Shown here: positions 18,308-38,700 of the stretch, piece by piece | How positions within the stretch are numbered: the stretch's first letter is position 1 | Layout of the letters: each line of letters begins with the position of its first letter | Assembly (NCBI GenBank): GCA_950097015.1 | Contig: CATNEN010000041.1 | Location: 930,001 to 994,000 of the forward strand | Length of the DNA: 64,000 nucleotides | Source: Macrostomum hystrix | Lineage: Eukaryota; Animalia; Platyhelminthes | Reading direction: 5' to 3' | Program-made: the position numbers and the translations under genes | Notes under the pieces: generated by a model | Database searches by the model: none | What the model was told of the DNA's origin: nothing | What the model saw: only the letters and a program-made list of their open reading frames with translations

Positions 18308-21113
18308 CAATTTAACTCCCAAGTCGCACAGCACGGCATTGCCTCACTTTCTGTCTATGGCACGGCGATGACGGACTGCAGCGGCAGGACTCACCTGTGG
18401 GTCTTCTGGCCCAGCGCCAACGCCACTGACTGCGCTCAGTCCGCAGACGTCAAGCTCTGCTTAGAGGACATGAAGCATGAGCAAGGCATCGCCAATGCCA
18501 CTGTTTTTGGCCCGGTGAGATCCGATTTCCTGGTGTGACTTTCCAGTTTGCCAGCGTGACTTTCTTTCTTTCTAGTGCGACTTTCCTGCTGGCTAGTGTG
18601 ACTTACCTGTTGACTATAGTGTGACTTTCCTGTTGACTATAGTGTGACTTTCCTGCTGGCAAGGGTGACTTTCCTGTAGATAGGGTGACTTTCCTGTGGA
18701 TAGGGTGACTTTCCTGTGGATAGGGTGACTTTCTTGCTCAGTCGAGGGGCAGTACATATGTTCGCGTTTGACATGCCTTCACAGGAGAAGCTGCAGACGT
18801 CACCGGGCCAGTTCTATCGACTCATGCAGCTGCCCTTAACTGGCCGCATCCTGCACTGCTCGAAGGCCTTCAATGTGCTGGTGAGCTGTCGGCTCAAGCT
18901 GCATCCGAGTCAGATTCCCATTTCCTTCAGCCACGCACCCGCACCCGCACACTCCGCCCTTTCAGCTCGAGCTCGCGCCATCGAACCAATCGGGCTGGAG
19001 GCAGGACACGAAATGCAGTGGCGATTTCAGCAGGTCCGCCTGCTTCATTCGCTGTGAGAGCCGGTGCACAATCTGCCTATTGGGCTCACTCTGTACTTGT
19101 GAAATTTGACTGCGGGAAAATATTGGAAGGATTGAAGGTCAGAGCAAAGGAGAGAGAAGGAGTGAATAAAACTGAAGAGTGAAGAGAGAGAAGGGAGAGG
19201 AGAGAGCGGAGGTAGAGGAGAGAGCGGAGGGAGAGGAGAGAGCGGAGGGAGAGGAGAGAGCGGAGGGATAGGAGAGAGCGGAGGGATAGGAGAGAGCGGA
19301 GGGAGAGGAGAGAGCGGAGGGAGAGGAGAGAGCGGAGGAAGAGGAGAGAGCGGAGGGAGAGGAGAGAGCGGAGGGAGAGGAGAGAGCGGAGGGAGAGGAG
19401 AGAGCGGAGGGAGAGGAGAGAGCGGAGGGAGAGGAGAGAGCGGAGGGAGAGGAGAGAGCGGAGGGAGAGGAGAGAGCGGAGGGAGAGGAGAGAGCGGAGG
19501 TAGAGGAGAGAGCGGAGGGAGAGGAGGAGCGGAGGGAGAAGAGAGAGCGGAGGGAGAGGAGAGAGCGGAGGGAGAGGAGAGAGCGGAGGGAGAGGAGAGA
19601 GCGGAGGGAGAGGAGAGAGCGGAGGGAGAGGAGAGAGCGGAGGGAGAGGAGAGAGCGGAGGGAGAGGAGAGAGCGGAGGGAGAGGAGAGAGCGGAGGGAG
19701 AGGAGAGAGCGGAGGGAGAGGAGAGAGCGGAGGGAGAGGAGAGAGCGGAGGGAGAGGAGAGAGCGGAGGGAGAGGAGAGAGCGGAGGGAGAGGAGAGAGC
19801 GGAGGGAGAGGAGAGAGCGGAGGGAGAGGAGAGAGCGGAGGGAGAGGAGAGAGCGGAGGGAGAGGAGAGCGGAGGGAGAGGAGAGAGCGGAGGGAGAGGA
19901 GAGAGCGGAGGGAGAAGAGAGAGCGGAGGGAGAGGAGAGAGCGGAGGGAGATGAGAGAGCGGAAGGAGAGGAGAGAGCGGAGGGAGAGGAGAGAGCGGAG
20001 GTAGAGGAGAGAGCGGAGGGAGAGGAGAGAGCGGAGGGAGAGGAGAGAGCGGAGGTAGAGGAGAGAGCGGAGGGAGAGGAGAGAGCGGAGGGAGAGGAGA
20101 GAGCGGAGGTAGAGGAGAGAGCGGAGGGAGAGGAGAGAGCGGAGGGAGAGGAGAGAGCGGAGGGAGAGGAGAGAGCGGAGGGAGAGGAGAGAGCGGAGGT
20201 AGAGGAGAGAGCGGAGGGAGAGGAGAGAGCGGAGGGAGAGGAGAGAGCGGAGGGAGAGGAGAGAGCGGAGGGAGAGGAGAGAGCGGAGGGAGAGGAGAGA
20301 GCGGAGGGAGAGGAGAGAGCGGAGGTAGAGGAGAGAGCGGAGGGAGAGGAGAGAGCGGAGGGAGAGGAGAGAGCGGAGGGAGAGGAGAGAGCGGAGGGAG
20401 AGGAGAGAGCGGAGGGAGAGGAGAGAGCGGAGGGAGAGGAGAGAGCGGAGGGAGAGGAGAGAGCGGAGGGAGAGGAGAGAGCGGAGGTAGAGGAGAGAGC
20501 GGAGGGAGAGGAGAGAGCGGAGGGAGAGGAGAGAGCGGAGGGAGAGGAGAGAGCGGAGGGAGAGGAGAGAGCGGAGGGAGAGGAGAGAGCGGAGGTAGAG
20601 GAGAGAGCGGAGGGAGAGGAGAGAGCGGAGGGAGAGGAGAGAGCGGAGGGAGAGGAGAGAGCGGAGGGAGAGGAGAGAGCGGAGGGAGAGGAGAGAGCGG
20701 AGGGAGAGGAGAGAGTTGAGTATTGTCGCCGGAGCGAAGAGTAACCCGTGGCATTCCACATCCGTGTCCCGGTGCCAGTGGCCGCTGACCGGCCCACCTG
20801 CAGCGATGGCGGTGACTTAGAGGGCAACTGCAGCATGAACAAGGAACTGCCGGCTGACATTCTCCAGCTCCTGCTGCAGCGGCGGCGGCAGCAACAGCTC
20901 GCCTGCGCCTCGCCGAGCCCCCCGAGCACCACCTTGGTCGGGCCGGTTGTCGGGACGACGGCCGCGCTGCTGGTGATCGCCGGCTTCGGCTTACTGGCCT
21001 GGGCGCTGCTGTCCAACCGGCTGGACCCGCCCATCGAGACGCGGCACTGGGAGCCGAAGGACCTGGTGTTCGTGGACCCGGACAACATCGAGTGCCGCCT
21101 GCTGGAGAACTGA
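18308..21113 (+). CDS. 3' part of a single-pass membrane protein with a short cytoplasmic tail; exons 18308-18514, 18785-18880, 18966-19033, 20804-21113; 5' exons unresolved (candidates near 17571-17880)
   Basis: Four exons chain with consistent phases (0, 0, 2) and GT-AG sites. Cys- and NxT-containing ectodomain, TM VVGTTAALLVIAGFGLLAWALL, about 35-aa tail ending ...ECRLLEN*. Confidence 0.65.
18535..18735. repeat. Degenerate 19-22-bp repeat (GTGACTTTCCTGT...)
   Basis: About 9 diverged units in an intron. Confidence 0.8.
19190..20715. repeat. 18-bp GA-rich minisatellite, about 1.5 kb (GAGAGCGGAGGGAGAGGA)
   Basis: Highly homogeneous intronic array; source of the three 550-650 aa low-complexity ORFs on the minus strand. 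Confidence 0.97.
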
Positions 21114-21605
21114 GCGGGGAAGCTTTGGCCTTGGGCTTACGGCTTCAGTTTGCCGGTGTCGTTTCACTTTGACGCAATCGGAGAAGTGTAGATATTCAAG
21201 AAGGATTGGATATTTGATGATTTTAGGTCATAGAATTGCAATGCTGCAAAACGATGAGGATTTCAATCCTTTAACTGGTGCGTTCCCATTGTTTCCACGC
21301 TGCATAGGTCCGATAAATTATTGTAATTATGACAATTACAAGTACTGACATTTGAATGCTGCAATGGTTGCCTTGGCAACCAACACTAAACAATAACTGT
21401 GCAAATGTATTAATCGCCAAAGCACTCAGTTGGACTCAATTCCAACAATGTCTTGTTGGTGTAATTGGTGTAACATACACATCTGCCATGCCACAGGTAG
21501 CGGCTGGTGTCGCTAATGACAACATTACACTTTATTGTGCAGGTAGTAAGCACCTGCGATTCAATCACTTACTGAGGCTTTTCACTGCCGAAATCCCAAA
21601 AATCC

Positions 21606-23810: not shown

Positions 23811-24789
23811 GCAACGCTGCTCACACATAACTAAGTAAGGCATTTGATTCAGCAGTTGTTGCATTTGCTGGCAGAAACAGATAGACAGACAGGTGCTCGC
23901 GCGGATCCGTGTGTATTTAGCAGAGCAATGAGCGGAGCGGGATGTTGACACAGGCATGAAGCCGCATAATAGATAACGGATAGTCAGGAGCTTATAAAAG
24001 AGTTCAAAGTAAGAAACTTTCATAAAAGTACAGTCGCACGCAAGCGGATAAAATATGTGAAGACTTTAAAGAAAAAAAGGTTCCTGAAGTCCAGAAGAAG
24101 AACTACAGTCGATCTTTGTAGCAAAGTACATTCTCAGCTAAAAAAGTACAAGTACAACGAAAAGGTCAAAGTCTGCTCAACTCTGCGCTGCTGCCTGTGA
24201 GAATGTGGGGCCCTTACAAAGCCAAACAAAATGAGTAAACGGCGAGAGTAACCATACCTATATTTGAAGCAACAATAGACTCGTCATCTTGCTATTGTAA
24301 ACCCATTTCATTCGACTGAATAATTCGTCCATGAAAAATGAATAATTTGGTTGAAAATTGAAAGCGAAAATGACAAGACACTCGAAAATAGTTTAGGATT
24401 TTGGTCATTCGCTTGTAATTAAGCTGAATTCAAATATAGAGGAGCATTTTGGCAGGCTGCAAAGCTTAAGCACATAAAAACTGCTTAAAAAGATTATCAG
24501 CAGTTCATGCTACTTATTGTAAGGGCCACGCCCGCAAAAAATGAGAAAAACTGCCGAATCAGAAGAGCTATGCACTTGAATCACAGACAGGCATAATCAG
24601 TGAGATCAGAGCAGCTCCATAAAATTATAACAAATATTTACAGGTAGAATCAGCCAATTATCTTTAATACACTCTAAATAAAATAATGTAGACATGACTC
24701 AGTTGCGCGGATAAGACTTCAAATGACAATGAGCGATAGATCAACAGGGATGAGGTAGGGCTGCCATTTCTTGGAAGTAAAGATAGTAA

Positions 24790-25070
24790 GCCCCGGATCG
24801 ACTGGGTGTCAGACTGGGTCAGGGTGTCACACTGGGTCAGGGTGTCAGTCTGGGTCAGGGTGTCAGACTGGGTCAGGGTGTCAGACTGGGTCAGGGTGTC
24901 AGACTGGGTCAGGGTGTCAGACTGGGTCAGGGTGTCAGACTGGGTCAGGGTGTCACACTGGGTCAGGGTGTCAGTCTGGGTCAGGGTGTCAGACTGGGTC
25001 AGGGTGTCAGACTGGGTCAGGGTGTGTTATTTTGGGTCAGGGTGGGTCAGACTGGGTCAGGGTGTGGGTC
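24790..25070. repeat. 18-bp GGG-rich minisatellite (GGGTCAGGGTGTCAGACT)
   Basis: Tandem units read directly. Confidence 0.92.
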
Positions 25071-25151
25071 AAGCAGTGTTATGTAAAACATAAACAGGGA
25101 TATGTGAAAACGGGGAGGATGTGTGAGGGTAGGTCAGTGGGTCATAGTGGG

Positions 25152-25643
25152 TCAGAGCAGGCTCGCATCGCTGGTCAGCCGCAGACGCGCTCCGGAGCCG
25201 GCAGAGCCAGGCCGAGATGCGGAGCCGCCGGCGCCGCCGCTGTCGGAGTGTTCGTAGGAGGTCGGCCGGCCGGAGCGGTGGACCAGGGCGGCCACGCGGA
25301 GTGTCTCGGAGGCGTACTCACCACCGCAGACTCCGGCGGAATAATCGTCGGAGGAGGACACAGCCAGCCGGTCATAGTCCGGGCTGCCACCGTCCAGCAG
25401 GGAGCCTTCGATGGACCTCTCCATGAGGGGCGTCATCGCGACCTGCCTGCCGAGACTGACGACTCCAGCGGCCGTTTCCAGAGGCGGTGGCGGCGGAAGA
25501 GTCGGTGGCCGAAGCTGCACCGGAGGTGGCGGAGGCGGCAGCCGCTGATGTTGTGGCGGCAGGGGCGGCTGCGGGCGCGAACTGCGCATGGAAGCTGCCG
25601 CGATGTCCACTGGAGCGGAGGGAGACGGCTTAAGATGAGCCAT
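25152..25643 (-). CDS. 163-aa Pro-rich, Tyr-motif ORF (MAHLKPSPSAP...DYDRL...DDYSAG...TSDASLL*); separate gene or detached terminal exon
   Basis: GC3-rich ORF with poly-Pro and acidic-context tyrosines resembling the adjacent adaptor gene; acceptor-like TTTTAG about 40 nt upstream of the ATG. Confidence 0.5.
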   Translation of the reverse strand: MAHLKPSPSAPVDIAAASMRSSRPQPPLPPQHQRLPPPPPPVQLRPPTLPPPPPLETAAGVVSLGRQVAMTPLMERSIEGSLLDGGSPDYDRLAVSSSDDYSAGVCGGEYASETLRVAALVHRSGRPTSYEHSDSGGAGGSASRPGSAGSGARLRLTSDASLL

Positions 25644-26063
25644 TGAAGTCCCAGGATTCAATGATGGCGAGTTATGCAATTATCCCTAAAAGTACATCGC
25701 TGGCAACAAGTCCTGGATTTTATTAGGGGCCATTGTGCTCAGTTTTAAATAAGCAGATAAGCGGCAAGCCAGTTGACAGCTATTGATAATTATTAGACAA
25801 CACAAAATTGCAATAAACTGGCATGCAAGACTTTTCTTGGAAAGAAAAAAGTAAAAACCAAGGCAATCTTGACGACATGGAAGAAATATCTCAGCCTGAG
25901 GGCGGTGCATCTAGGCACTTCTAGTTAATACACGGTGCGATGAGACATAAATAATTTCATTTAAACAAAACAACTAAAATGCTCTGCGGCGGTCGCCAAT
26001 GCGGAGCTGCGCCTCACCAGTGAAGCCAGGCGGCACAGTTCAACAAATCTCAGGCTGACGACC

Positions 26064-27978
26064 TCAGCACAGCTCGCAGTCGTCTGATTGAGTTGAGCAA
26101 AGTAATGGCAGACTAATAAAGTAGGCTCAAACTTGAGTACAGTCTAAAGTGCATGAATAGTTAACACTTGATCGATGGCGAAGTGCACTCAGAGAAAAGT
26201 TCGAAAAACTAAAAGTGCAAATGAACTACAAAAAAGTGCAAATTCACAGTGCATTAGCACTTGAAGGAGTGCATTGGTCCTAAAATTTGGAACTACGACT
26301 CGTGCCTGTAAAGAACTGAGATTGTTAGGATGTACTTTAACTGCTTCAAATGATGCACCAATGAAGCACTTAAAGCGTTACCTATTGAAAGTGCATCAGA
26401 GGCATAAAACTACTTCGAGTAGATCAAAGAAAGGCCCGGGGTGGCCTCACCGTCACTGTCCATGTGGCGAAAGTTCTGCATCTCGTTGAGGATGCTGAAC
26501 CCGGTTGCCTGCCGGCCGCTGAACCTCCGGACGGCGTCTCTGGGCGACCGGCCGAACCGGCCAGACGGCTGCGGCGGGAGTCGCGGCGGAGCCACGGCCA
26601 GAGATGACAATGAGTTGGACACGGACTCGCGCATGCCTGCCAAGCAAATCAAAGGCTTTTAGTTAGCGCGCTACTGTCAGTAGTAATGTCAGTTGGTGAC
26701 GAGTGTTGCATTTTCGTAGTATCAAGCTTTGATACGAAACATATGGTCTCACCGTCTGTGATAAACTCTGAGTACAGGTCTGAGTAGGAGTCCCCGACCC
26801 CAGCGACGTCGGCACCGAGGCCCAGGCCAGCTCCGCGAGTCTCGGCATCGTACAGGTCCTCGTAGAGTGAGTCCTCGGCTGCGGCTCCGGCCCGGCTGCC
26901 ACCGGCTGCTGCCTGGGCGCCGAGGTGCAGCGGGCGCTGAAGGTTGGCCGCGGCGGAGGCGGGCCGGCCGCCTGTAAGCGGCAGCGCATTGCGGGCGCGC
27001 AGGCTGGCCAGGGACTCCCTGACAGTCACCCGCTGGTACTCGCCGCCTGCAGCTCCGCCTTCGCGACGCAGGTCATCAAGTATTGGCCGAAGGATTGGCT
27101 GCTGCTGCTGTTGCTGCGGCTGATGAGAAAACGCAGCAGTGTCTGCAAGTTTTTGTTCATTTTTATTTTTCGTGTACATGATTTTAGTAAAATCGGACAA
27201 CGCATTCGCTCAACAGTACAGAGACCAAGCTTACTGCCCCTGGGGAAAGACCACGGCGGCATCTCAACAGTACAGAGACCGAGCATACTGCCCCTGGGGA
27301 AGGACCACGGCGGCATCTCAACAGTACAGAGACCGAGCATACTGCCCCTGGGGAAGGACCACGGCGGTATCTCAATAGCTCCCAAACCGAATGACCGATT
27401 TTCGTGAAAGTCCGCCCTATGTAGTTTCCGCCCTTCACAATGAACTGACTTTCAGCATCGTCAAGATATTCAGCGATTGTTGCCGAAGACACTCTTGACA
27501 AGGACAGCTACATTGCTCTGCGTAAACCTGTACAGTACTCGTAAATTCATATTGGCTCAATTATAAAAAAATTAACGATATAATCAACAGAATCTGCTTA
27601 ACGGTTTGCAATGCCCCGTGTGCTACACTGCAAGCTCCTTCAACCTGGGCTATCAAACCCAGTGTGCCCCAGGACTCGCTACAATGCGAACGCAACGTGG
27701 GTGAGGGCGAATAACACTTTGCTAATCCAATAGGCAAGCATGCGAAAAATTGCAACAATGTCGCTTATTTAGTGAGAGAAGAGAGAGAAAAACATTTTTC
27801 ACTAGCGGAACGTGAGGAGGTGACTGACTGAGGAGGTGAGGAGGCTGGTGGCGTGCCAAATGACCGATGGATTTGAAGCATTGCGGGGGCCACGTGACTG
27901 AAATGTCTGCCAGGAATAGGGCAAAAAAAGAACCCGAGGCAAGTCTAGGTCCGATTTTGTCTGAGGCTGAGGCTTACT

Positions 27979-28074
<96 letters not shown>

Positions 28075-28125
28075 GGCAGACAGACAGACAGACAGACAGG
28101 CAGACAGACAGACAGACAGACAGGC

Positions 28126-28194
<69 letters not shown>

Positions 28195-28663
28195 GGCAAG
28201 GCAGGCAGACAGGCAGGCAAGGCAGGCAGGCAGACAGGCAGGCAAGACAGGCAGGCAAGGCAGGCAGACAGGCAGACAGACAGGCAAGGCAGGCAGACAG
28301 GCAGACAGGCAGGCAAAATCAGAGGCCTAGTTCAGGCAAGGAGGCAAACACAAAGCATATTTTGAGTAGTTCTCTAACAATTTTATGCCCAGCCGCAGAG
28401 GAATTCCTATTACGCACGTGACCTCAGTGGATGACCCGGCCCTGAGCTGGGCGACTGTGAGCGTCGGCCGCCCTCCCCACCCTGCAGCGCGGAGTTCATA
28501 TAAAAAATGTAGGATATGGGATATTGGATTGAAATGGCAGCTGTTAAAGCCAAGTGCCAGGCTGAGAGGAAGCCCGGGAGAAATTTGAGCTGCTGCTGTG
28601 TGTGTGTGAGTGTGTGTGAGTGTGTGTGAGTGTGTGTGAGTGTGTGTGAGTGTGTGTGAGTGT

Positions 28664-28694
<31 letters not shown>

Positions 28695-28717
28695 AGTGTG
28701 TGAGTGTGTGTGAGTGT

Positions 28718-28748
<31 letters not shown>

Positions 28749-28812
28749 AGTGTGTGTGTGTGTGTGTGAGTGTGTGTGAGTGTGTGTGTGTGAGTGTGTG
28801 TGTGTGAGTGTT

Positions 28813-28858
<46 letters not shown>

Positions 28859-28876
28859 TGTGTGTGTGTGAGTGTT

Positions 28877-28912
<36 letters not shown>

Positions 28913-28943
28913 TGTGTGTGTGTGTGTGTGTGTGAGTGTGTGT

Positions 28944-29008
<65 letters not shown>

Positions 29009-32000
29009 TGTTTGTGAGTGTGTGTGTGTGTGTGTGTTTGTGAGTGTGTGTGTGTGTGTGTGTTTGTGAGTGTGTGTGATAAGCCAAGCCAGGCAGTCCC
29101 AGAAGGCCAATTCTCATAGTTCAGTGCGAGGGGATTAGGCGGTGGATTATCGTGTCTGTACCTGCACAGTCAGCGGCCCAGCACCCGCAGTGGGTCTCGG
29201 GGCGCCTGAAATCGATCCCATTCTCGGCTGCATTGGTTCGCCCATCAAGGCCGAGTTGCCTCCGCTGGTCGAAGTCGAAGGATGCCCACTTGAGAAACTC
29301 GATTTCACTCCAACTGAATGGGAAGAGCCTCTCTAATTATGGGATCGAGGTTGAGAAGCGGATTAAGGAGGGCCAGGCTTCAGAGCCGCACTGTGCGGAG
29401 TCAATTAGGCGGTCCCAGCTCCCAGTGCTGCTGGGGCTGGAACATCTCGCCCCTGGTATCGGGACGGCTTCGATGAAGGGGATATTTCTCCCATTTCAAT
29501 CCCGGGAATCTTCTTCATCACGCCCGTTTGGGACAGGCCCCTAAATTTGTTCTCCCCACTTCCCCCTAGAAAAGGGGGCCACGGCGCTGGCCACGGCAGC
29601 AACAAGGCGACCATCCATCAGCTGCGACCCGCCCCCACGCCATGGCTTGCAAGACTGGGCGAACTGAAACACAAAAACACATTCAACGGAGGCAGCAGGA
29701 AAAGCGGCGGCTGCACTTCAAACCCAGCGGCTTCATCGCCCTCCGCGCCAGACTCTCTACCCACTCTCACACTCTACCCACTCTTACACTCTCCCCTCTC
29801 ACACACTCTCCCCTCTCTCACACACTCTCCCCTCTCTCTCACACTCTCCCCTCTCTCACACACTCTCCCCTCTCTCACACTTTTTCTCCCTTCTCGCTCT
29901 TTTTCTTTCTCTGGCTCTTTCTCCCCTCCCACCCACTCTCTCCCCAAGTTGTGCTACAAGCCTGACAGCGAGGGACATAATAGCCAGCAAAAAGCTGTCA
30001 AAAGCAAAGCCCAAACCAAGCAGAGGGTATGCAAGCATTCAGCTGCATAGGCAAACAGCTGAATGGGCCCACTTTGCCCGCCTCGTTCACGTCAACCCCG
30101 GCATGGGGGCGAATTAAGCTGACAGGCGCACACAGGGAGGGGCCGCACAGGCTGATAGCAGATATGCGCCCCTCCATTTGCTGCTGGCTAAAGTGCAGGG
30201 CGCAAATCCAAGGCCAGCATCCGAGGCGCAGTGGATATCTGCGGCTGGCTGGGAGAACCAGCTTGCTCACCGAGAAAGCTGCTAATGCTGCACCAAATCA
30301 CTCAATCACCCATCGGCCTCCTAAAAACTGCTAACCCAACCGAATGCCCTCCCACAGCCACCCCGACTGTCCGCCTTGCTGAGAGGCAATCAGATTTCCC
30401 TAATGCGGTGGCTTTTTATTGTGGGACACCCGGAACAGACAGACTGACACCCGGAACAGACAGGCTGACACCCGGAACAGACAGGCAGACACCCGGAACA
30501 GACAGACTGACACCCGGAACAGACAGGCTGACACCCGGAACAGACAGGCAGACACCCGGAACAGACAGGCAGACACCCGGAACAGACAGGCAGACACCCG
30601 GAACAGACAGACTGACACCCGGAACAGACAGGCTGACACCCGGAACAGACAGGCTGACACCCGGAACAGACAGACTAACACCCGGAACAGACAGACTGAC
30701 ACCCGGAACAGACAGACTGACACCCGGAACAGACAGGCTGACACCCAGAACGGACAGGCAGACACCCGGAACAGACAGGCAAGACGGGATGAACCAAAGT
30801 CATTAGTGAGCAGTACTCAAAGCAGTCCCTGGGACAATAGAATGACAGAAGCAGAGCAGCCGCAGACAGCAATGGTAACTGGACTCAAACTGCACTTGGC
30901 GCGAATCACTCCCTGCTGTAAAGTACATCCTTACTCAGCGCCACATTGGGAGTAGCAACTTTGCATGATTCAATGGGTACTCAGGGCACTCAGGGTGAGG
31001 CAGCGGGAGTTAGAGCTGGGTTGGACCGCGTGGAAGGACCGCCCAGCGACACAAATTCTTCTCTCGACCTGCCCCAATTGTGAACAATGGCAGAGAAACA
31101 ATGCGCCAATCCCGCGGGTCCGGACAGCCGCTCACGGAGGCCCGCAGGCAATTGTGGGAGAATTGGTGGGCTAAAGCATGACTTTCACTTCTTTTTTAAC
31201 GGTTCCGCACTTCAACAGCGCCTCAGCGCGCATTGGCCCAGTCATTCAGCTGACACACCCAGCCAACGCGTGGCTCTCTTGCTGTTGGGACACTTTCTGC
31301 TCCCAACTATGCGAGAGCGGGCCTGAGCCTCTTGGCCGCGGCTCTGCACCGGCTACCGGTCTGGTACATCTTCTTTGTGGTTCCCTCAATTCCCCAATGC
31401 ATGCGCTCACCGTATTTCCCCATCCTCAGCCAGAAATCCCATATTCCTCATCTCTAAACACCAAATCTATTCCTCAAATCCCTATCCGAAAATCCCTTTC
31501 CTAGATTCATACCCTTAAAACTTTTTTCGGAAATCCCTGTACTCCAGATCAAGCCGAATTCTAAATTCCTACAGTTCTTTCTCTTAATCATTTGTACTTA
31601 AAACCATTTCCTAATTATATTAAAATTAAAACATTTCGAATCCCAGTTCCAGTCGCAAACTCGCTCTCAAAAAAGTATCATATTTCCTAAAAATTCGGGT
31701 TGTCGGGGCACAAACCTGCGCCAGCCGCGTCCAGGTCGATGTTGGAATAGTAGGCCACCGGCTCCTGCAGGATGCGGTCAACCTCCTCGCGCCGGTAATT
31801 CCGGTCCGGCAGCGGCGGCGGCTGGCCGCCCGCACTGCCGCTCACCGACAGCTCCGCCAAAGCGGCTGCCGCGCCAACCTCGGAGGCTGGCGCCGAATCC
31901 GCCGTGTTATTCAGCGAATTCGGCAGCGTCTTGCAGATGCTGGCGTACACATTCTGCTGCTGATGTTGCTGCGGCGACGGCTCAACTGCGTGCCGCCGAC

Positions 32001-35000
32001 GCGAAACTGGCGTTGGCGTGGCTGTCGCCGGCTCGTCGTGGGCTCCGCTGTGGCGGCGGATGGCCGAGTAGAGCGGGTCGATCTCGCTGGTCAGGTCGCT
32101 GTCTATGGTGTAAACCGACGCGGCGGCTGGCAGTCGCGGCGAGGTGCCACCGGCTCCGGCGGCAGCGGCGCGGGTAGTCGCCGCGGCCAGCGTCGGTAGA
32201 TCCGGGGTCGTCTCGGACGCGGCAGCGGAAGAGGCCTGGCGGCCGGAGCCGAAGCCGAGTCGATGGGCGATGCCCGGCAGCGGGAAGTCCTGCAGGTGCC
32301 GCTTGAGGAGGCTGCGGCCGGCTGCCGCTGCGGAGAGATGAGGCGCAGGCTGGGGAGGCTGGGGCGGCAGCGGCAGCGGTGGCTGCTGCTTCGGGGGAAC
32401 TGGTGGCAGCTCGCGGTCCGGGTGGCTGCGGCTAGACAGAACGGACTGCTGAGACTCGAGCCTGGAAGTGGGGGCGATGGACGCTGAAGCTAAGGGGGCC
32501 CGTCTGTGAAGACAAAATAAAGATAATCGATGGCTGTGTATTTGAGACGCGGATGGTCATGGAGAAACAGTGCTCATTTAGTGCTGTCCATAAGTGCAGT
32601 AGTCGCTAATTGGCATCGGCCTTGGGAGCCATGATGAGCGGCTCATTCATTCAAAACTCGCATGCAGAGCGAAGTTCGATTTGCGTGTAGGCGAAAGGAG
32701 GCGCAGGATTTGTGAGAGGGCGGATTAGTGAGAGGGCGGATTTGTGAGAGGGCGGATTTGTGAGAGGGCGGATTAGTGAGAGGGCGGATTTGTGAGAGGA
32801 CGGATTTGTGAGAGGGCGGATTTGTGAGAGGGCGGATTTGTGAGAGGGCGGATTTGTGAGAGGGCGGATTTGTGAGAGGGCGGATTTGTGAGAGGGCGGA
32901 TTCGTGAGAGGGCGGATTTGAGTGAAATACGGTCGCGCCAATAACGCACCTGGGTCTGGGCAGCTGGGACGCGGAGTCGCTGGGGGCTGTCGACTTCCCG
33001 GTGTCCGCAGTCGCTGCGCCAGGAGCGTCGGGGCGCCGCAGGCGGGCCACGAAGCTGTCGCGAAGACTGCCGAGTCGACGCCCGACCACCGAGCGACGGT
33101 CCCGCCTGGCCGCCGTTGACGCGGGCGCCGCAGCTGCCGGGGCCGAATCGCCGAGACTGGCCGGCGGCGCTGCAGACTCGTAGATGTCGGAGCCGGCCGC
33201 GTCACGGCTGCGAGCGTGGGGGAGGCGAGGACGGAGGGGTTGGTTCAGTTGACTACGGGAAACCTTACAGTTTTTCTTACCTATCAGGATGTGAACGCGA
33301 TTAGATATTTAGGGGGATATTGGCGCCGAATTAGGGATCCAGAATCAAGGACTGACTCATCTGGGATCTGGAGATAAAGGATTGATAATGAGGGGTTAAG
33401 GATTAGCGGGTTGATTGCCGATTAGAGCAGACGGGGATTTGAGACTGGTTGCTGATCGGTTTGCAGGATTTGGAATTGTTTGCGAAGTCTGGGATTTGAG
33501 ACTGGGTGCTGATCGGTTTGCAGGATTTGGAATTGTTTGCGAAGTCTGGGATTTGAGACTGGGTGCTGATCGGATTGCAGGATTTGGAATTGTTTGCGAA
33601 GTCTGGGATTTGAGACTGGGTGCTGATCGGTTTGCAGGATTTGGAATTGTTTGCGAAGTCTGGGATTTGAGACTGGGTGCTGATCGGTTTGCAGGATTTG
33701 GAATTGTTTGCGAAGTCTGGGATTTGAGACTGGGTGCTGATCGGTTTGCAGGATTTGGAATTGTTTGCGAAGTCTGGGATTTGAGACTGGGTGCTGATCG
33801 GTTGGCAGGAATTGGAATTGTTTGCGAAGTCTGGGATTTGAGACTGGGTGCTGATCGGTTTGCAGGATTTGGAATTGTTTGCGAAGTCTGGGATTTGAGA
33901 CTGGGTGCTGATCGGTTTGCAGGATTTGGAATTGTTTGCGAAGTCTGGGATTTGAGACTGGGTGCTGATCGGTTGGCAGGAATTGGAATTGTTTGCGAAG
34001 TCTGGGATTTGAGACTGGGTGCTGATCGGTTTGCAGGATTTGGAATTGTTTGCGAAGTCTGGGATTTGAGACTGGGTGCTGATCGGTTTGCAGGATTTGG
34101 AATTGTTTGCGAAGTCTGGGATTTGAGACTGGGTGCTGATCGGTTGGCAGGAATTGGAATTGTTTGCGAAGTCTGGGATTTGAGACTGGGTGCTGATCGG
34201 TTGGCAGGAATTGGAATTGTTTGCGAAGTCTGGGATTTGAGACTGGGTGCTGATCGGTTTGCAGGATTTGGAATTGTTTGCGAAGTCTGGGATTTGAGAC
34301 TGGGTGCTGATCGGTTTGCAGGATTTGGAATTGTTTGCGAAGTCTGTTAAAAGCACATCGCAATTTGCCTTCGCAAGTTGCAAGTATTTTGTGACCTCCG
34401 CGAGATTCAAACAAAATGAAAGGTCGGCCGAGCCCCAATCAGCTAGCCAACCGAATTCATCTCCAAGAAAGTGTCTGGCTTCGCATTCACCCCAGACAGT
34501 CGCAGCATGATGCCTCGCAGGCGGTTCAGGCCGGACACAAATAGCAGCTTCTGACCCGCTGCGCAGGTGGCTTCCCTCAGTCGGGCAGGTTCAATAGCGG
34601 GAGTGAAAAAGCAAGAATAGCCCAGGTGCAACATTCCAGGCCACGGGATCCGGTCTTATCTCGGCTGCCAAATCTGACAGAACAGGCGAGGCGCACCAGG
34701 GCTTCATTCCCATGGGGCACACAGCACATTGCGATCCTCCGTGCAAGCCCGCTTGCTGCGGACTGGGCAGCACAGCTGGGTCTTTTATAGCATTCAAGTT
34801 CATCGGAGTCCAGTCCGAGTTGTGCTCACTGGATCCATTCCAAGGATCAAGGTGTGCTCAGTCCATTCCAAGGATCAAGGTGTGCTCAGTCCATTCCAAG
34901 GATCAAGGTGTGCTCAACTCATTCCAAGGATCAAGGTGTGCTCAGTCCATTCCAAGGATCAAGGTGTGCTCAACTCATTCCAAGGATCAAGGTGTGCTCA

Positions 35001-35761
35001 ACTCATTCCAAGGATCAAGGTGTGCTCAACTCATTCCAAGGATCAAGGTGTGCTCAACCAATTCCAAGGATCAAGGTGTGCTCAACTCATTCCAAGGATC
35101 AAGGTGTGCTCAACCAATTCCAAGGATCAAGGTGTGCTCAACCCATTCTGAGAATCAAGGTGTGCTCAACTCATTCCAAGGATCAAGGTGTGCTCAACTC
35201 ATTCCAAGGATCAAGGTGTGCTCAACCAATGCCAAGGATCAAGGTGTGCTCAACCCATTCTGAGAATCAAGGTGTGCTCAACTCATTCCAAGGATCAAGG
35301 TGTGCTAAACCCATTCCAAGAATCAAGGCATGGTCAGCTGAGAACATTAAAAAAGCAAGCGAGGTGAAAAATTATAAAGAGGATGGCTCATTTAACATAA
35401 AATTACATCTCGGTTGCTAAGCGTTTCTAACGGAGCCGAGGCCAGTGACTCACCTGCAGTAGGACTGATTATCCTGGTTGCCAACAGGTCGCCAGTCAGC
35501 AGTCGGCAGCTGCTGGCCCAGCTTTCCATTCCTGTGGCTGTTATTGTTGCCGCTGCTGGCTCGGCTGTTGGGCGCGCGGCCGCCCTCAGTGTCGGGTTCG
35601 GGCAGCTTGACCCGACCATGCAGCAGGCCCTTAAACCGGACGCACAGGCAGAGGCCGGTCATGAGTGACAGGCAGCTCAGGGTGCAGGCCAGCAGCAGGA
35701 GGGAGACGGCGGACTGCAGACTCTGCGAGCTGGCGGCCCCGAGAGGCCCCGGGCTCTCCAT
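26064..35761 (-). CDS. Single-pass transmembrane adaptor-like protein, about 649 aa; exons 35761-35454, 33207-32950, 32503-31716, (29332-29162 optional), 27142-26753, 26636-26451, 26083-26064
   Basis: Exons chain with GT-AG sites and consistent phases (2, 2, 1, 1, 1). About 17-aa N-terminus, TM AVSLLLLACTLSCLSLMTGLCLCV, then a disordered tail with PPVPPK/PPLPDR and many Tyr motifs (IYES, LYSAI, VYASI, YYSNI, LYEDLYD, SYSDLYS). The last exon is the least certain. Confidence 0.72.
27210..27375. repeat. 54-bp repeat, 3 copies
   Basis: TCAACAGTACAGAGACC...GGCGGCATC starts at 27210, 27264 and 27318. Confidence 0.92.
27976..28315. repeat. (GACA)n/(GGCA)n compound microsatellite
   Basis: Read directly; intronic. 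Confidence 0.95.
28595..29077. repeat. (GT)n/(GTGTGA)n microsatellite
   Basis: Read directly; gives the spurious THTH ORFs. Confidence 0.96.
30424..30780. repeat. 21-bp minisatellite (ACACCCGGAACAGACAGACTG)
   Basis: About 17 tandem units; intronic. Confidence 0.93.
32706..32920. repeat. 16-bp minisatellite (GTGAGAGGGCGGATTT)
   Basis: About 13 units immediately downstream of the donor at 32949 (minus strand). Confidence 0.92.
33434..34346. repeat. 57-bp minisatellite, about 16 copies
   Basis: GGGATTTGAGACTGGGTGCTGATCGGTTTGCAGGATTTGGAATTGTTTGCGAAGTCT units; open in three frames, hence spurious 310-340 aa ORFs. Confidence 0.95.
34833..35330. repeat. 28-bp minisatellite (CATTCCAAGGATCAAGGTGTGCTCAACT)
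   Basis: About 18 tandem units in intron 1 of the adaptor gene. Confidence 0.94.
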
Positions 35762-38700
35762 GGCTGGGGCGACTGTAAGGAGTTTTCGATGGGGCTGCTG
35801 TGAAGCAAAGCCTGCAGGGCAGCCCTGAATACCGGGTTATGGTGCCTGAACGACGAGGGGTGGCCTGAATATCAGGGGAAAGGTGTCTAGAGGACTCAGT
35901 GAGCTGATTCCTCAGTGAGTATCAGTTTTAAGTTAGGGGTTCACAAACGTACTGAAAATTATCAAATAACTTTAGAAGATGGGCCTACTCAGCAATGAAA
36001 GGTAAATTAAAAATGATACTATACTGAAGTAGTAAGCAAAGTAATCAAGAGATAATGCTTGATAAATACATTCTGTCCAATTAAATAAACTGCCTTCTTC
36101 TTAACAAGTTTTAGAACTTACTCATTGTAAAATTTTAACAGTAAGCTGGCTTTATAATATAAAATAATAAAAGAAAAAACATCATCCCTGCATATAATAA
36201 CTTTTGGGGACACTATATTACATTGAGTTACGAGTATTAAGCTTTGACAATATCACTTCTTTAACTAATCAATTTAATATCATCAATATATGCTCGCAAT
36301 ATATTGATGTCTAAGTTAAAACAGTAAAAACTTATATTAAATTTTAAATACAATATTTTCTTTTATTTAACTTACATTGTGTACAAAGTTAATATAAGGA
36401 ACAAACAATATCTAATACTGAGCATTATATTGAAACAAGTTAATAGTTAGTATGTTATGAAGTTTTGTTAACTATGCAAAAACATAGAAATTTAATTTTA
36501 ATTACTACCTAGCCATTGATTGTACATAGCTACATGATAAAATTGAATATTTATATTATTTACATCTGGCAAAACAATCTGCTAGAGATTCATATTTCTA
36601 TAAGTCAAAGTTTTCAAATAAGCTGTTATAAAAAACAATATTTTTATGCTAAATAAAACATAAGTCTTTCAAGCCAAAAGACAAAGCCAAAGAAACTCAA
36701 TTAGGGAAAGCCAGAAGTAAAAAAAGCCTAAGAAACATATAAAAAGAACCAATATAGAGTAGGCCAGTGGCTGAGTGGCATACTGTCTAGAATCTTGACC
36801 TGGTCCTGGAAAATGGGACATATTTTCATCAACTTAGTTAATAAATTTATGAACCAATTTTTAGATATAAAACAAGAATATTTTTTTCGTAGGGCCTATC
36901 TTTCACTTTAAATTTGTACGAGTTTCTATAACTCTTTCGCTCGCAAAAGCAATCAGTTTATGGTGGGTTAATATTTACAGTGTAAGTGTAAGTAGCACCG
37001 CACTGACCCAATTGAGGCACTTAATCGATATTAATAGTACCACAGTAACAATGGTGCTCATAAAACATGATAGAACAATAACGTACACTGAGAAGTTTGT
37101 AAAATTGTCTCATTTCAAGTCATTGGACGCAGGACGAATGTGCTATGCTCTAAACTGCGTAGTAAATCACGAGACGAAGCTATAAAAACTCATCTAAAAG
37201 TGATTTTAATTTTCTGCCAAACAAAACTAGTTCATGCAGGATACTGGCTTTAACAAAAAAGAATATAGCTGTTAAGACGCCTTAGGAATTTTTTTATCCT
37301 TATAGATCTCAACACTATCAATTTTTTTTCATACTTTCCACTTCCTCATCTGAGCTTGTCGAGTTATTTTTTGCACACTATCCTAGCTCTCTCTTCTGAA
37401 CTTTCGGACCATCTCGCGACTCATTGTGCGGACTAGCTGATCAGCTTGCACATCATAATATCAATTAAATTAGAACAAAAAATCACTACTTTGGTTCTAA
37501 ATGTTCACGGAGCATCGAACTGCAATCTCTATATATTCTGTAATGCCACGGTTAAGATAATATTTTTATCACCGCATGCGCAAAATGACATGTCATAAAA
37601 ACTATCAAAGACATATTAAACCAGAATGTCTAGTTCAAGAACAACTACTGCACATGGTGGTCCTTGATCTAGTTCTAATAGAAGAACTTCAGAATCCGTA
37701 ACTTTTTCTTTTAAAAAGATGGCTTTTGCTGACGCTGGCTTTGAAACATAATATTGAATAATAACTTTATGTTATGAAATTAAAAAAAGCAGAATCAGAC
37801 ACTGCTGACCAACTGGCCCAACACCAGAGGATGGTTGTAAAAGTTCATCCACTGTATACGCATAGCAATAAAACGCACATCTTGGATAATTTTTTCGAAC
37901 TGTGCATAAAAATTTTTACTTTCCTTCAAAATAAAATCGAAAACCAAATGCCTTTATAGTGGCACCCTATTTATGTAATTTTAATTCCGATGCAATTCGG
38001 AAATTTTTTTTCCTATTATAACTAAAAAAGGACAGAATAATACTTAAATCAAGGATTCATTGCTTCGCCTTTCTTTATCTGTCGTGATCTTTTGCCTTAA
38101 AGGGAGCTTTAACTTTTATCTGTATTCTCTTATCTCTTGAGCAAAGCTTTTTCTCCAAAAGGCTAACGCGAGCATGCCACACACTGTAGCAACATTGGTC
38201 TTTCCCATAGGCAATAAACAAGTTATGGTATTGCTGTTTCACGCACAAATCGCTCAGCTGGAGCAGATGAAGCGTTGAGCACCCCGTGGCAACTACTACA
38301 GCCCGCATACAGATTGGACTTGCGAGCCAACTCAATGACCTACATGTACGCTGCGTGCCAAGCTGTTAGTATCGTATTTTATTAAGTCCTCGCATTCTCT
38401 TTGAGCACTCCGAATAGAAAATATCTCTTTATGGCTAGAGCAGCACTGCTCCAATCTTTGCCTGCTCTGTTTGAGACACACGCCGAAAATTGAGTTCGGA
38501 GCAGTGAGGCGCCTGCAGTGCAGCAAATGGCTGAGAGCCCAACGGGGTGGCCCTCACAAACGCCCTCTCTGTTTTTCTCTGTCTCTTGATCTCTCTGTAT
38601 TTTCCACTTCAAACTCATCTTGCGAGCTGCCAAATGGCCGCCGGAAAGCGACATCTTCTGCGCCTGCACTGTGCCAGAGACAAAAGTTTAGCGTGCCCAA

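What the first reader, a model, noticed from the sequence alone, without database searches (positions are those of the whole stretch)
26064..35761. PAG/LAT-like palmitoylated transmembrane adaptor architecture in an invertebrate
Seen: no signal peptide, about 17-aa ectodomain, one TM ending in C-L-C followed by basic residues, then about 600 disordered residues with SH3-type motifs (PPVPPK, PPLPDR) and about 12 tyrosines, many in YxxI/L/V context (DIYES, PLYSAI, NVYASI, AYYSNI, EYQRV, SLYEDL, SYSDL). Known: this is the defining layout of vertebrate pTRAPs (PAG1/Cbp, LAT, NTAL, LIME), and YSxV/I and EPIYA-like motifs recruit Csk/SHP2 SH2 domains. Inference: a convergent or deeply homologous Src/Csk-regulating raft adaptor that homology search would miss.
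Basis: partly seen in the sequence, partly recalled or inferred. Interest (0 to 1): 0.7.

Follow-up and report, generated by a model that had tools for sequence, protein, structure and literature searches.

The report
Flatworm membrane-anchored tyrosine-motif adaptor gene
A Macrostomum flatworm expresses a gene, found so far only in that genus, for a protein built like the vertebrate membrane adaptors PAG/Cbp and LAT: a tiny outside stub, one membrane anchor with two cysteines, and a long floppy tail of conserved tyrosine and proline docking motifs; it shares no detectable sequence ancestry with them and its function is untested.

Summary
The gene lies on the minus strand. RNA contigs of the same species join exon 1 (start codon, 17-aa N-terminus, TM helix, C-L-C, R-F-K) to exons 2 and 3 at GT..AG introns and run on into exon 4. 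They carry the Macrostomum spliced leader 12 nt upstream of the ATG, so no upstream exon adds an ectodomain to this mRNA.

Two corrections. The gene has six coding exons, not about four. The protein is about 781 aa with 17 tyrosines.

All six exons are under purifying selection against M. lignano (dN/dS 0.19), while the introns cannot be aligned. Sixteen of 17 tyrosines are kept in the orthologue and 13 of 17 in a paralogue whose other residues are 37% identical. Also conserved are the juxtamembrane C-x-C, a class I SH3 motif (RELPPVP) and a class II one (PPLPxR). The class I PDZ-type C-terminus (-SLL) is identical in the orthologue; the paralogue's last-exon reading frame ends -SVL. Pfam and AlphaFold2 show no folded domain beyond the TM helix.

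Three large protein searches found relatives only in Macrostomum, and no PAG, LAT, LIME1 or SCIMP Pfam model matches.

Verdict: the protein has the build of a transmembrane adaptor, closest to PAG. Homology to PAG is not shown. Palmitoylation, phosphorylation and Src/Csk binding remain inferences.

The parts
35454..35773 (-). Exon 1. The spliced-leader acceptor (ttacag|G) is at 35773 and the ATG at 35761-35759. It encodes 102 codons plus 2 nt: the N-terminal stub, the TM helix, C-L-C and the basic juxtamembrane stretch.
   Evidence: RNA contigs of runs X2-X4 lie on 35454-35773. Their 24-nt 5' overhang equals the 3' part of the 35-nt Macrostomum spliced leader.
35639..35710 (-). Transmembrane segment, residues 18-41 (AVSLLLL...GLCLCV). 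The N-terminal side has net charge about 0 to -1 and the C-terminal side about +3, which predicts N-terminus outside and C-terminus inside.
   Evidence: Hydropathy peak 2.2. The equivalent helix 12-47 of the orthologue is modelled with pLDDT 92-97.
35642..35650 (-). Juxtamembrane Cys38-Leu-Cys40, a candidate S-acylation pair. It is followed by R-F-K.
   Evidence: Both cysteines are conserved in the orthologue (GLCLCVRFKG) and the paralogue (GLCFCIKIRS), while the two other TM cysteines are not. Acylation itself was not tested.
32949..33207 (-). Exon 2 (86 codons). It holds DIYES and a basic amphipathic helix, GRRLGSLRDSFVARLRR.
   Evidence: Joints 33207/35454 and 32460/32949 are seen in contigs of three runs. 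The AF2 helix 147-165 of the orthologue has pLDDT about 84.
31716..32460 (-). Exon 3 (248 codons plus 1 nt). It holds six tyrosines and both SH3-type motifs.
   Evidence: Contigs cover it at 99-100% identity. dN/dS is 0.17.
32389..32415 (-). R-E-L-P-P-V-P-P-K: a class I SH3 ligand form (RxxPxxP) overlapping PxxPxK.
   Evidence: RELPPVP is identical in the orthologue and the paralogue. The consensus is from PMC8152464.
32059..32118 (-). Conserved block S-V-Y-T-I-D-S-D-L-T-S-E-I-D-P-L-Y-S-A-I, with two tyrosines.
   Evidence: Nearly identical in the paralogue, SVYTIDSDLTSEADPLYTSL.
31801..31818 (-). P-P-L-P-D-R: a class II SH3 ligand form (PxxPxR). It is followed by NYRREEVDRILQ and YYSNIDLD.
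   Evidence: Conserved as PPLPSR in the orthologue and PPLPRR in the paralogue.
26753..27142 (-). Exon 4 (2 nt plus 129 codons plus 1 nt). It holds five tyrosines. EYQRVTVRESLASLRARNALP lies at 26979-27041 and the acidic cluster EDSLYEDLYD...DSYSDLYSEF at 26763-26876.
   Evidence: The 5' end comes from the RNA overhang at 31716, which matches 27142 onward. The 3' end (G|gtgaga) is inferred from frame, from exon homology with L001 and L002, and from the limits of conservation.
26451..26636 (-). Exon 5 (2 nt plus 61 codons plus 1 nt). It holds MRESVSNSLSSL...ILNEMQNFRHMDSD, with acceptor ttggcag|G and donor G|gtgagg.
   Evidence: Inferred. The same exon limits occur in M. lignano models P0006 and P0005. 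The peptides read through the donor are not conserved in the three loci. There is no RNA of this species over it.
25152..25609 (-). Exon 6 (2 nt plus 151 codons plus TGA at 25154-25152).
   Evidence: P0006 joins HMDSD to VDIAAAS.... Nucleotide identity to L002 is 74% and dN/dS is 0.19. A homologous exon lies downstream in the paralogue locus L001 at 37115-37345.
25155..25166 (-). C-terminal A-S-L-L: a class I PDZ-ligand form (S/T-x-hydrophobic-COOH).
   Evidence: Identical in the M. lignano orthologue. The paralogue's exon 6 ORF ends S-V-L. Binding was not tested.

Best explanation
This is a real, expressed, spliced-leader trans-spliced six-exon gene of a Macrostomum flatworm. It encodes a type III (N-out, C-in) single-pass membrane protein of about 781 aa. 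The protein has a 17-aa extracellular stub, one TM helix with a conserved cytosol-facing C-x-C, and a cytosolic tail of about 736 aa that is intrinsically disordered and made of conserved short linear motifs.

The most likely mechanism (inferred):
- The cysteine pair is S-acylated and helps place the protein in the plasma membrane.
- Src-type kinases dock on the RELPPVP and PPLPxR motifs through their SH3 domains.
- These kinases phosphorylate the acidic-context tyrosines (YESA, YSAI, YASI, YSNI, YQRV, YEDL, YSDL, YSEF, YDRL).
- The phosphotyrosines recruit SH2 proteins such as Csk, Src-family kinases and Grb2/SHP2-like adaptors.
- The -SLL end may tie the complex to a PDZ scaffold.

In function this would be a transmembrane adaptor of the PAG/Cbp type. 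It arose independently or has diverged beyond recognition.

Shown here: gene structure, expression, topology features, lack of a folded domain, and motif conservation under purifying selection. Inferred: acylation, phosphorylation, partners and membrane location.
For: - Splice joints and the SL overhang appear in RNA contigs. The SL sequence is confirmed in PMC8629364.
- TM hydropathy and flank charges fit an N-out anchor.
- The AF2 model of the orthologue has a TM helix at pLDDT above 90, two short helices, and 615 of 770 residues below 50.
- Pfam gives no domain for the window exons or the four full or partial homologues.
- dN/dS is 0.19 over six exons at dS 0.8, and only the exons align.
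- 16 of 17 tyrosines are conserved in the orthologue and 13 of 17 in the paralogue, whose other residues are 37% identical (P 0.0012).
- 8 of 17 tyrosines are YxxPhi (P 0.005) and 13 of 17 have D/E at positions -4 to -1.
- The C-x-C, RELPPVP and PPLPxR motifs are conserved. The -SLL end is identical in the orthologue, and the paralogue's exon 6 reading frame ends -SVL.
- The TRAP definition and PAG's features (10 Tyr, two SH3-binding proline regions, a C-terminal PDZ ligand, two juxtamembrane palmitoylation sites) come from PMC4861716 and PMC3492796.
- Language-model look-alikes include LIME1/PAG, SCIMP, vaccinia A36R and HCMV UL135 clusters (leads only).
- Csk and Src-family kinases are conserved throughout animals (PMC3492796).
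Against: - There is no experimental datum on acylation, phosphorylation, partners or localisation.
- No homology to any TRAP family was detected.
- The atlas scores are mostly below 0.9, where chance hits are common.
- YxxPhi motifs also fit clathrin-adaptor sorting signals.
- The AF2 alignment is shallow (10 rows), so low pLDDT is only weak evidence of disorder.
- Exons 4 (3' end), 5 and 6 lack RNA support from this species.
- The family is seen only in one genus, so it cannot be a general invertebrate solution for Csk recruitment.
- The window's YSNI is YSSI in the paralogue and YSAI is YTSL, so the +1 to +3 positions drift.
Confidence: 0.6

Rival explanations
1. Trafficking protein or cargo. 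The YxxPhi tyrosines are unphosphorylated sorting signals for AP-1/AP-2 clathrin adaptors, and the protein cycles between the membrane and endosomes, or organises that traffic, rather than scaffolding tyrosine-kinase signalling.
For: Eight YxxPhi motifs are present. Palmitoylated single-pass proteins with short lumenal parts are common in the Golgi and endosomes (general knowledge). One atlas look-alike, A36R, is a trafficking and actin-tail protein.
Against: - One or two sorting signals are the norm, not 8 to 17 conserved tyrosines.
- Nine conserved tyrosines are not YxxPhi.
- Acidic residues before most tyrosines and the two canonical SH3 ligands fit kinase substrates better.
- A36R itself works through Src phosphorylation (general knowledge).
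Confidence: 0.15
2. Membrane-cytoskeleton or junctional scaffold that works mainly through proline-rich/SH3, PDZ and helical motifs (for example in nerve or epithelial cells). On this view the tyrosines are structural parts of binding motifs rather than phospho-switches.
For: - Three proline-rich regions and a -SLL end.
- Conserved helical blocks (RRLGSLRDSFVARLRR, REEVDRIL) with higher pLDDT.
- The best atlas look-alike is a Semaphorin-6A tail cluster (0.90).
Against: Tyrosine is the residue type most selectively conserved, and it lies in acidic kinase-substrate-like contexts. This reading does not exclude the main one, since PAG does both.
Confidence: 0.15
3. A receptor with a real ectodomain. 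Other transcripts would start further upstream and splice into exon 1, so the short-stub form would be only one isoform.
For: SL trans-splicing can occur at internal acceptors. Only three small RNA data sets were looked at.
Against: - All contigs that reach the 5' end carry the SL at 35773.
- No conserved block lies upstream of exon 1 in the alignment with L002 up to window position 36500.
- The orthologue and paralogue models begin at the equivalent Met.
- The reading frame upstream of the ATG has no hydrophobic or signal-like stretch.
Confidence: 0.05
4. Not a functional protein: chance ORFs in GC-rich repeat-laden DNA, or a decaying gene.
For: The region is GC-rich, with long ORFs in several frames and tandem repeats. 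UniProt M. lignano models are frame-shifted and carry inconsistent names.
Against: - Spliced, SL-capped RNA is present.
- dN/dS is 0.19 in the spliced frame in all six exons.
- Intron positions are conserved in a paralogue.
- The transcript-guided NCBI models P0005 and P0006 are clean.
Confidence: 0.02

Closest known systems
PAG1/Cbp (vertebrate Csk-binding transmembrane adaptor, Pfam PF15347)
   Same: - Type III topology with a very short ectodomain.
- Two juxtamembrane cysteines.
- A long domain-free tail with 10 or more tyrosines in Y-[SAE]-x-[ILV] contexts.
- Two proline-rich SH3-ligand regions.
- A class I PDZ-ligand C-terminus (PAG -TRL, here -SLL).

PAG's features are taken from PMC3492796 and PMC4861716.
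   Different: - No detectable sequence homology (Pfam E>1).
- C-x-C spacing instead of PAG's pair of cysteines just after the TM.
- Almost twice as long.
- No exact YSSV Csk site in the window protein. The nearest are YSAI, YASI and YSNI; the paralogue has YSSI.
- Found only in Macrostomum.
- No experimental data.
LAT / NTAL(LAT2) / LIME1 / SCIMP (other palmitoylated TRAPs)
   Same: A short stub, a TM helix, juxtamembrane cysteines and a Tyr-motif tail. LIME1 and SCIMP clusters appear among the language-model look-alikes.
   Different: - LAT and NTAL work through several YxN Grb2/Gads sites. Here there is only one YxN (YSNI), and it is not kept in the paralogue.
- Those proteins are much shorter (about 150-300 aa), immune-cell specific and restricted to vertebrates.
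- No Pfam match.
Viral membrane-anchored adaptors: vaccinia A36R and HCMV UL135
   Same: An N-terminal membrane anchor and a disordered cytosolic tail with Src-phosphorylated tyrosines or SH3 ligands. They are atlas look-alikes at 0.83 and 0.88.
   Different: They are unrelated in sequence, viral and much shorter. The atlas scores are in the range where chance hits occur.
M. lignano hypothetical proteins BOX15_Mlig002805g1 (P0006) and BOX15_Mlig024999g1 (P0005)
   Same: True homologues. P0006 is the orthologue (65-80% identity per exon, same six exons). P0005 is the paralogue (about 40% identity, same intron positions).
   Different: Both are uncharacterised. The P0005 model stops by reading through the exon 5 donor. 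The UniProt versions (P0001-P0004, P0009, P0010) are fragmentary or frame-shifted and carry unsupported domain names.

Membership tests
Transmembrane adaptor proteins (TRAP class, functional definition) | Extracellular part of only a few residues and no cleavable signal peptide | tested here: met
   17 residues precede the TM segment. The hydrophobic stretch is 24 residues long, starts at residue 18, and is followed by a +3 flank. The SL at 35773 excludes upstream coding exons in this mRNA. No SignalP-type predictor was available.
Transmembrane adaptor proteins (TRAP class, functional definition) | Single transmembrane helix near the N-terminus | tested here: met
   There is one hydropathy peak of 2.2 in exon 1. 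AF2 models helix 12-47 in the orthologue at pLDDT 92-97 and no other long helix.
Transmembrane adaptor proteins (TRAP class, functional definition) | Juxtamembrane cysteine motif that is palmitoylated | tested here: inconclusive
   C38-L-C40 sits at the cytosolic end of the TM helix and is conserved in the orthologue and paralogue. Actual S-acylation cannot be tested with these tools.
Transmembrane adaptor proteins (TRAP class, functional definition) | Long cytoplasmic tail without an enzymatic or folded domain, carrying several tyrosine motifs | tested here: met
   Pfam gives nothing. 615 of 770 residues are below pLDDT 50. There are 17 tyrosines, 16 and 13 of them conserved.
Transmembrane adaptor proteins (TRAP class, functional definition) | Tyrosines are phosphorylated and recruit SH2 proteins | not testable with these tools
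   Only the sequence context is available: acidic residues at -4 to -1 for 13 of 17 tyrosines, and 8 YxxPhi.
PAG1/Cbp family (PF15347) | Sequence homology to PAG | tested here: not met
   hmmscan against Pfam-A at E<=1 gives no PAG hit for the window exons or for P0001-P0003 and P0005. phmmer and profile searches return only Macrostomum proteins.
PAG1/Cbp family (PF15347) | Csk SH2 docking site of the YSSV type | tested here: inconclusive
   The window has YSAI, YASI and YSNI, and the paralogue has YSSI and YTSL. These are similar in form. Binding was not tested.
PAG1/Cbp family (PF15347) | Two proline-rich SH3-binding regions and a C-terminal PDZ ligand | tested here: met
   Met as motif forms only. 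RELPPVP is RxxPxxP and PPLPDR is PxxPxR, both conserved. The -ASLL end is identical in the orthologue.
LAT / LAT2 family (PF15234, PF15703) | Sequence homology and multiple YxN Grb2/Gads sites | tested here: not met
   There is no Pfam hit. The single YxN (YSNI) changes to YSSI in the paralogue.

The most novel reading that the evidence does not exclude
Macrostomum flatworms carry their own PAG/Cbp-like adaptor. It would be acylated and membrane-anchored, phosphorylated by Src-family kinases docked on its SH3 ligands, and would then recruit Csk through Y-S/A-x-I sites. This would be the first palmitoylated transmembrane adaptor outside vertebrates. It would be either an independent invention or a PAG relative diverged beyond recognition, and it would give a testable answer to how Csk reaches the membrane in an invertebrate.
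Probability: 0.2. Interest if true: 0.75.

Novelty: new variant of a known kind. Interest (0 to 1): 0.5.

Why it matters
Csk and Src-family kinases are conserved from choanoflagellates to humans (PMC3492796). The membrane adaptors that bring Csk to Src (PAG/Cbp, LIME and others) are described from vertebrates, and my literature searches turned up no invertebrate member.

This gene family copies the PAG layout feature by feature and is uncharacterised. It sits in a flatworm genus that includes a laboratory model (M. lignano, with RNAi and transgenesis), so the question can be tested directly.

If the family is an analogue, it shows that this layout evolved more than once. If it is a hidden homologue, it pushes TRAP origins back to early bilaterians.

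It also shows that a domain-free, fast-evolving protein can still be given a testable functional hypothesis from conserved short motifs.

Its restriction to one genus, as far as the searches see, limits how general the result is.

Tried and rejected
- **Pfam scans** of all exon ORFs and of four homologues gave nothing.
- **The look-up of encoding contigs** for the UniProt models P0001 and P0002 returned 'not on record'. The NCBI models P0005 and P0006 did give loci.
- **Reading frames of the UniProt M. lignano models.** These models switch frame in places (for example TSTS where DIYES should be).
- **The ORF at 25155-25679 as a separate downstream operon gene.** It has its own ATG at 25642, an AATAAA at 25719-25724 and a ttttag acceptor near 25687. 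I rejected this reading because P0006 joins HMDSD to VDIAAAS, the acceptor ctccag|TG fits phase 1, and the paralogue locus has the same exon.
- **The read-through C-terminus ...GEATPGLSLIYSK** as the main end. I rejected it as the conserved form because the read-through peptides differ in all three loci and all three keep a G|GTRAG donor. A short isoform is not excluded.
- **The spliced-leader AUG as start codon.** It is out of frame by one base.
- **UniProt names** of the M. lignano fragments (Velvet, SH2, Cadherin_C, RING-type, PUM-HD, protein kinase). No such domain is found in the sequences that were scanned (P0001-P0003, P0005). P0004, P0009 and P0010 were not scanned.
- **Search for relatives outside Macrostomum.** I used phmmer against 1.84 billion representatives with exon 3, a profile search with A1, and a region search with exons 5-6. 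None were found.
- **Literature search** for the M. lignano gene ids gave no paper.
- **Earlier scan notes.** A words search found none on this gene, and the look-ups by place listed none.
Full report
**What is there.**
- The finding lies on the minus strand of a repeat-rich, roughly 50-58% GC stretch.
- Exon 1 reads: Met at 35761, then 17 residues, then a 24-residue hydrophobic segment ending G-L-C-L-C-V, then R-F-K-G-L-L-H-G-R-V-K.
- A 19-residue Kyte-Doolittle window peaks at 2.2 over residues 21-39.
- The N-terminal flank carries one acidic residue and no basic one. The C-terminal flank has net charge about +3. A long hydrophobic segment that starts at residue 18 with this charge pattern is a signal anchor with the N-terminus outside, not a cleavable signal peptide. 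This is an inference from the positive-inside rule; no predictor was available.

**Organism.**
- A word search with the exon 3 ORF found only two Macrostomum lignano proteins.
- Earlier notes of this scan also place the genome in Macrostomum.
- Synonymous divergence from M. lignano is about 0.8, so the window comes from a different Macrostomum species.

**Transcript structure.**
- Four public runs hold exon 3.
- Their contigs were laid on 31600-37599. In three runs (X2-X4) they skip 33208-35453 and 32461-32948, both GT..AG on the minus strand.
- These runs are therefore RNA-derived, although their kind is not on record.
- This fixes exon 1 at 35773-35454, exon 2 at 33207-32949 and exon 3 at 32460-31716.
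- The phases (2, 0, 1) select exactly the frames that carry DIYES, PPVPPK, PLYSAI, NVYASI, PPLPDR and AYYSNI.
- Beyond 31716 the contigs continue with letters that match the window from 27142 onward, just after an acceptor cttgcag|. That puts exon 4 in the frame of EYQRV, SLYEDLYD and SYSDLYSEF.
- At the 5' end the contigs carry 24 letters that are not in the window. Together with the G at 35773 these are the last 25 nt of the 35-nt M. lignano spliced leader printed in PMC8629364. PMC10468722 reports that the leader is highly conserved in the genus.
- The mRNA is thus trans-spliced 12 nt upstream of the ATG (context GCCATGG), and no upstream exon can add an ectodomain to this mRNA.
- The leader's own AUG is out of frame and opens a 32-codon ORF that overlaps the start.

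**The 3' part and the sixth exon.**
- A phmmer search of 1.84 billion representatives with exon 3 returned four proteins, all from M. lignano. Profile and region searches added P0006 and a few fragments.
- P0006 (770 aa, NCBI BOX15_Mlig002805g1) is the clean orthologue. P0005 (722 aa, BOX15_Mlig024999g1) is a paralogue.
- Their loci (L002, L001) show the same intron positions as the window.
- In P0006 the sequence HMDSD is followed by VDIAAAS.... This is the ORF at 25155-25679 of the window, entered at an acceptor ctccag|TG at 25609 in phase 1.
- All three loci have a G|GTRAG donor after HMDSD. The peptides obtained by reading through it are unrelated.
- The paralogue locus has a homologous exon (MTPLMERSIEGSL...DYERLSVL) 1.5 kb downstream of its annotated end.
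- I therefore place exon 4 at 27142-26753, exon 5 at 26636-26451 and exon 6 at 25609-25155, with the stop at 25154-25152.
- These three junctions rest on conservation and canonical sites, not on RNA of this species. My single read-laying run could not reach them.

**Is it coding and constrained?**
- blastn of window 24500-36500 against L002 gives exactly six blocks of 70-74% identity, which coincide with the six exons. The introns do not align.
- Nei-Gojobori dN/dS is 0.15-0.32 per exon and 0.19 overall.
- The frame-shifted UniProt models do not survive comparison with the NCBI models. Together with dN/dS this settles the frames.

**Nature of the protein.**
- Pfam finds nothing in any exon or homologue at E<=1.
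- AlphaFold2 on the orthologue with a 10-row alignment gives a TM helix (pLDDT 92-97), a helix over the RRLSGLRASFLARLRR block (about 84), a short helix at REEVDRIL, and 615 of 770 residues below 50. The alignment is shallow, so this is weak support for disorder.
- The cytosolic 736 residues are 71% P/S/A/G/Q/E/K/R/D.

**Conserved blocks** between the window, the orthologue and the roughly 40%-identical paralogue:
- GLC[LF]C[VI][RK]
- [DG]IYE[ST]
- LR[DE]SF[VI]ARL
- DRELPPVP
- LL[KR]RHLxDxPLP
- SVYTIDSDLTSExDPLY
- [NH][VI]YASI
- PPLPxRNYxREEVDRILQ
- YYSxI[DE]LD
- EYQRVTVRESLASLRARNALP (identical in all)
- DSLYED[LI]Y
- DSYSDLYSEF
- LNExxxFRHMDSD
- MTPLMERSIEGSL
- DY[DE]RL

**Tyrosine statistics.**
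- Of 17 tyrosines, 16 are kept in the orthologue (other residues 71%; P 0.024).
- Thirteen are kept in the paralogue (other residues 37%; P 0.0012).
- Eight are YxxPhi against 17% expected (P 0.005), and 13 have D/E within four residues upstream.

**Other motifs.**
- RELPPVP fits the class I consensus RxxPxxP and PPLPDR fits the class II consensus PxxPxR (PMC8152464).
- Exon 6 adds RPQPPLP and RLPPPPP.
- The C-terminus -D-A-S-L-L is identical in M. lignano and has the class I PDZ-ligand form.

**Comparison with the known.**
- TRAPs are defined by a few extracellular residues, one TM domain, usually a juxtamembrane palmitoylation motif, and a long tail of tyrosine motifs (PMC4861716).
- PAG/Cbp adds two juxtamembrane palmitoylation sites, nine or ten tyrosines including Src-SH2 (YEEI/V) and Csk-SH2 (YSSV) sites, two SH3-binding proline regions and a C-terminal VTRL PDZ ligand (PMC3492796, PMC4861716).
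- The flatworm protein matches each of these as a sequence form. It matches PAG better than LAT, because it has only one YxN site and that site is not conserved.
- It fails the membership test: no PAG, LAT, LIME1 or SCIMP model matches, and all detectable relatives are in Macrostomum.
- Language-model look-alikes of the paralogue include a Sema6A-tail cluster (0.90), HCMV UL135 (0.88), LIME1/PAG (0.85), vaccinia A36R (0.83), PAG (0.79), LIME1 (0.78) and SCIMP (0.77). This is a suggestive list of membrane-anchored adaptors, but the scores are ones that chance can reach.

**Verdict.**
- The PAG-like transmembrane-adaptor architecture is real, expressed and conserved.
- The mechanism (acylation, Src docking, tyrosine phosphorylation, recruitment of Csk or other SH2 proteins, PDZ tethering) is the best-fitting inference at about 0.6 for the general adaptor role and about 0.2 for the specific Csk/PAG-like role.
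- The rivals are a trafficking role for the YxxPhi motifs and a non-phospho cytoskeletal scaffold.

**Rule compliance.**
- I never joined the window's exons for a search or a fold. Database proteins P0005 and P0006 served as full-length proxies.

Noticed in passing
window 35759-35775 (minus strand); L002 9990-10015: The spliced leader ends in AUG. In this mRNA that AUG lies 14 nt before the main ATG and is out of frame, opening a 32-codon ORF that overlaps the start codon. The same 14-nt spacing would hold in the M. lignano orthologue if its acceptor is the cag just before the annotated transcript start.
   Followed up: partly
window 27209-35328 (introns 1-3 of the gene): The introns are largely tandem arrays: 57 nt x16 (33434-34346), 28 nt x17.6 (34835-35328), 16 nt x13 (32706-32920, within intron 2, starting about 30 nt from the exon 2 donor), 21 nt x17 (30425-30780), GT-rich 10-mers (28600-29079), (GACA)n (27979-28312) and 54 nt x3 (27209-27375). 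They create long spurious ORFs in all frames.
   Followed up: partly
window 25719-25724 (minus strand), inside intron 5: An AATAAA lies about 690 nt after the read-through stop at 26410-26412. It could end a short isoform that terminates ...LIYSK instead of using exon 6.
   Followed up: no
proteins P0001-P0004, P0009, P0010 (UniProt M. lignano entries): Fragments of this one gene family carry six different automatic names: Velvet, SH2, Cadherin_C, RING-type, PUM-HD and protein kinase 'domain-containing'. The three of them that were scanned (P0001-P0003) have no Pfam hit; P0004, P0009 and P0010 were not scanned. Several models switch reading frame compared with the NCBI models.
   Followed up: partly
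L001 35674-35698 and 37115-37345: The annotated M. lignano paralogue model (PAA67047.1) ends by reading through a perfect G|GTAAGT donor. A conserved last exon lies 1.5 kb downstream, unannotated.
   Followed up: partly
window 19048-21144 (minus strand): A 2-kb tandem array is open in all three minus-strand frames (PLSPLPP / SALSSP / SLLSLR repeats) with strong GC skew. It lies downstream of the gene and looks like satellite DNA rather than coding sequence.
   Followed up: no
window 24804-25065: An 18-nt tandem repeat (14 copies) starts less than 100 nt after the stop codon of exon 6, inside the presumed 3' UTR.
   Followed up: no
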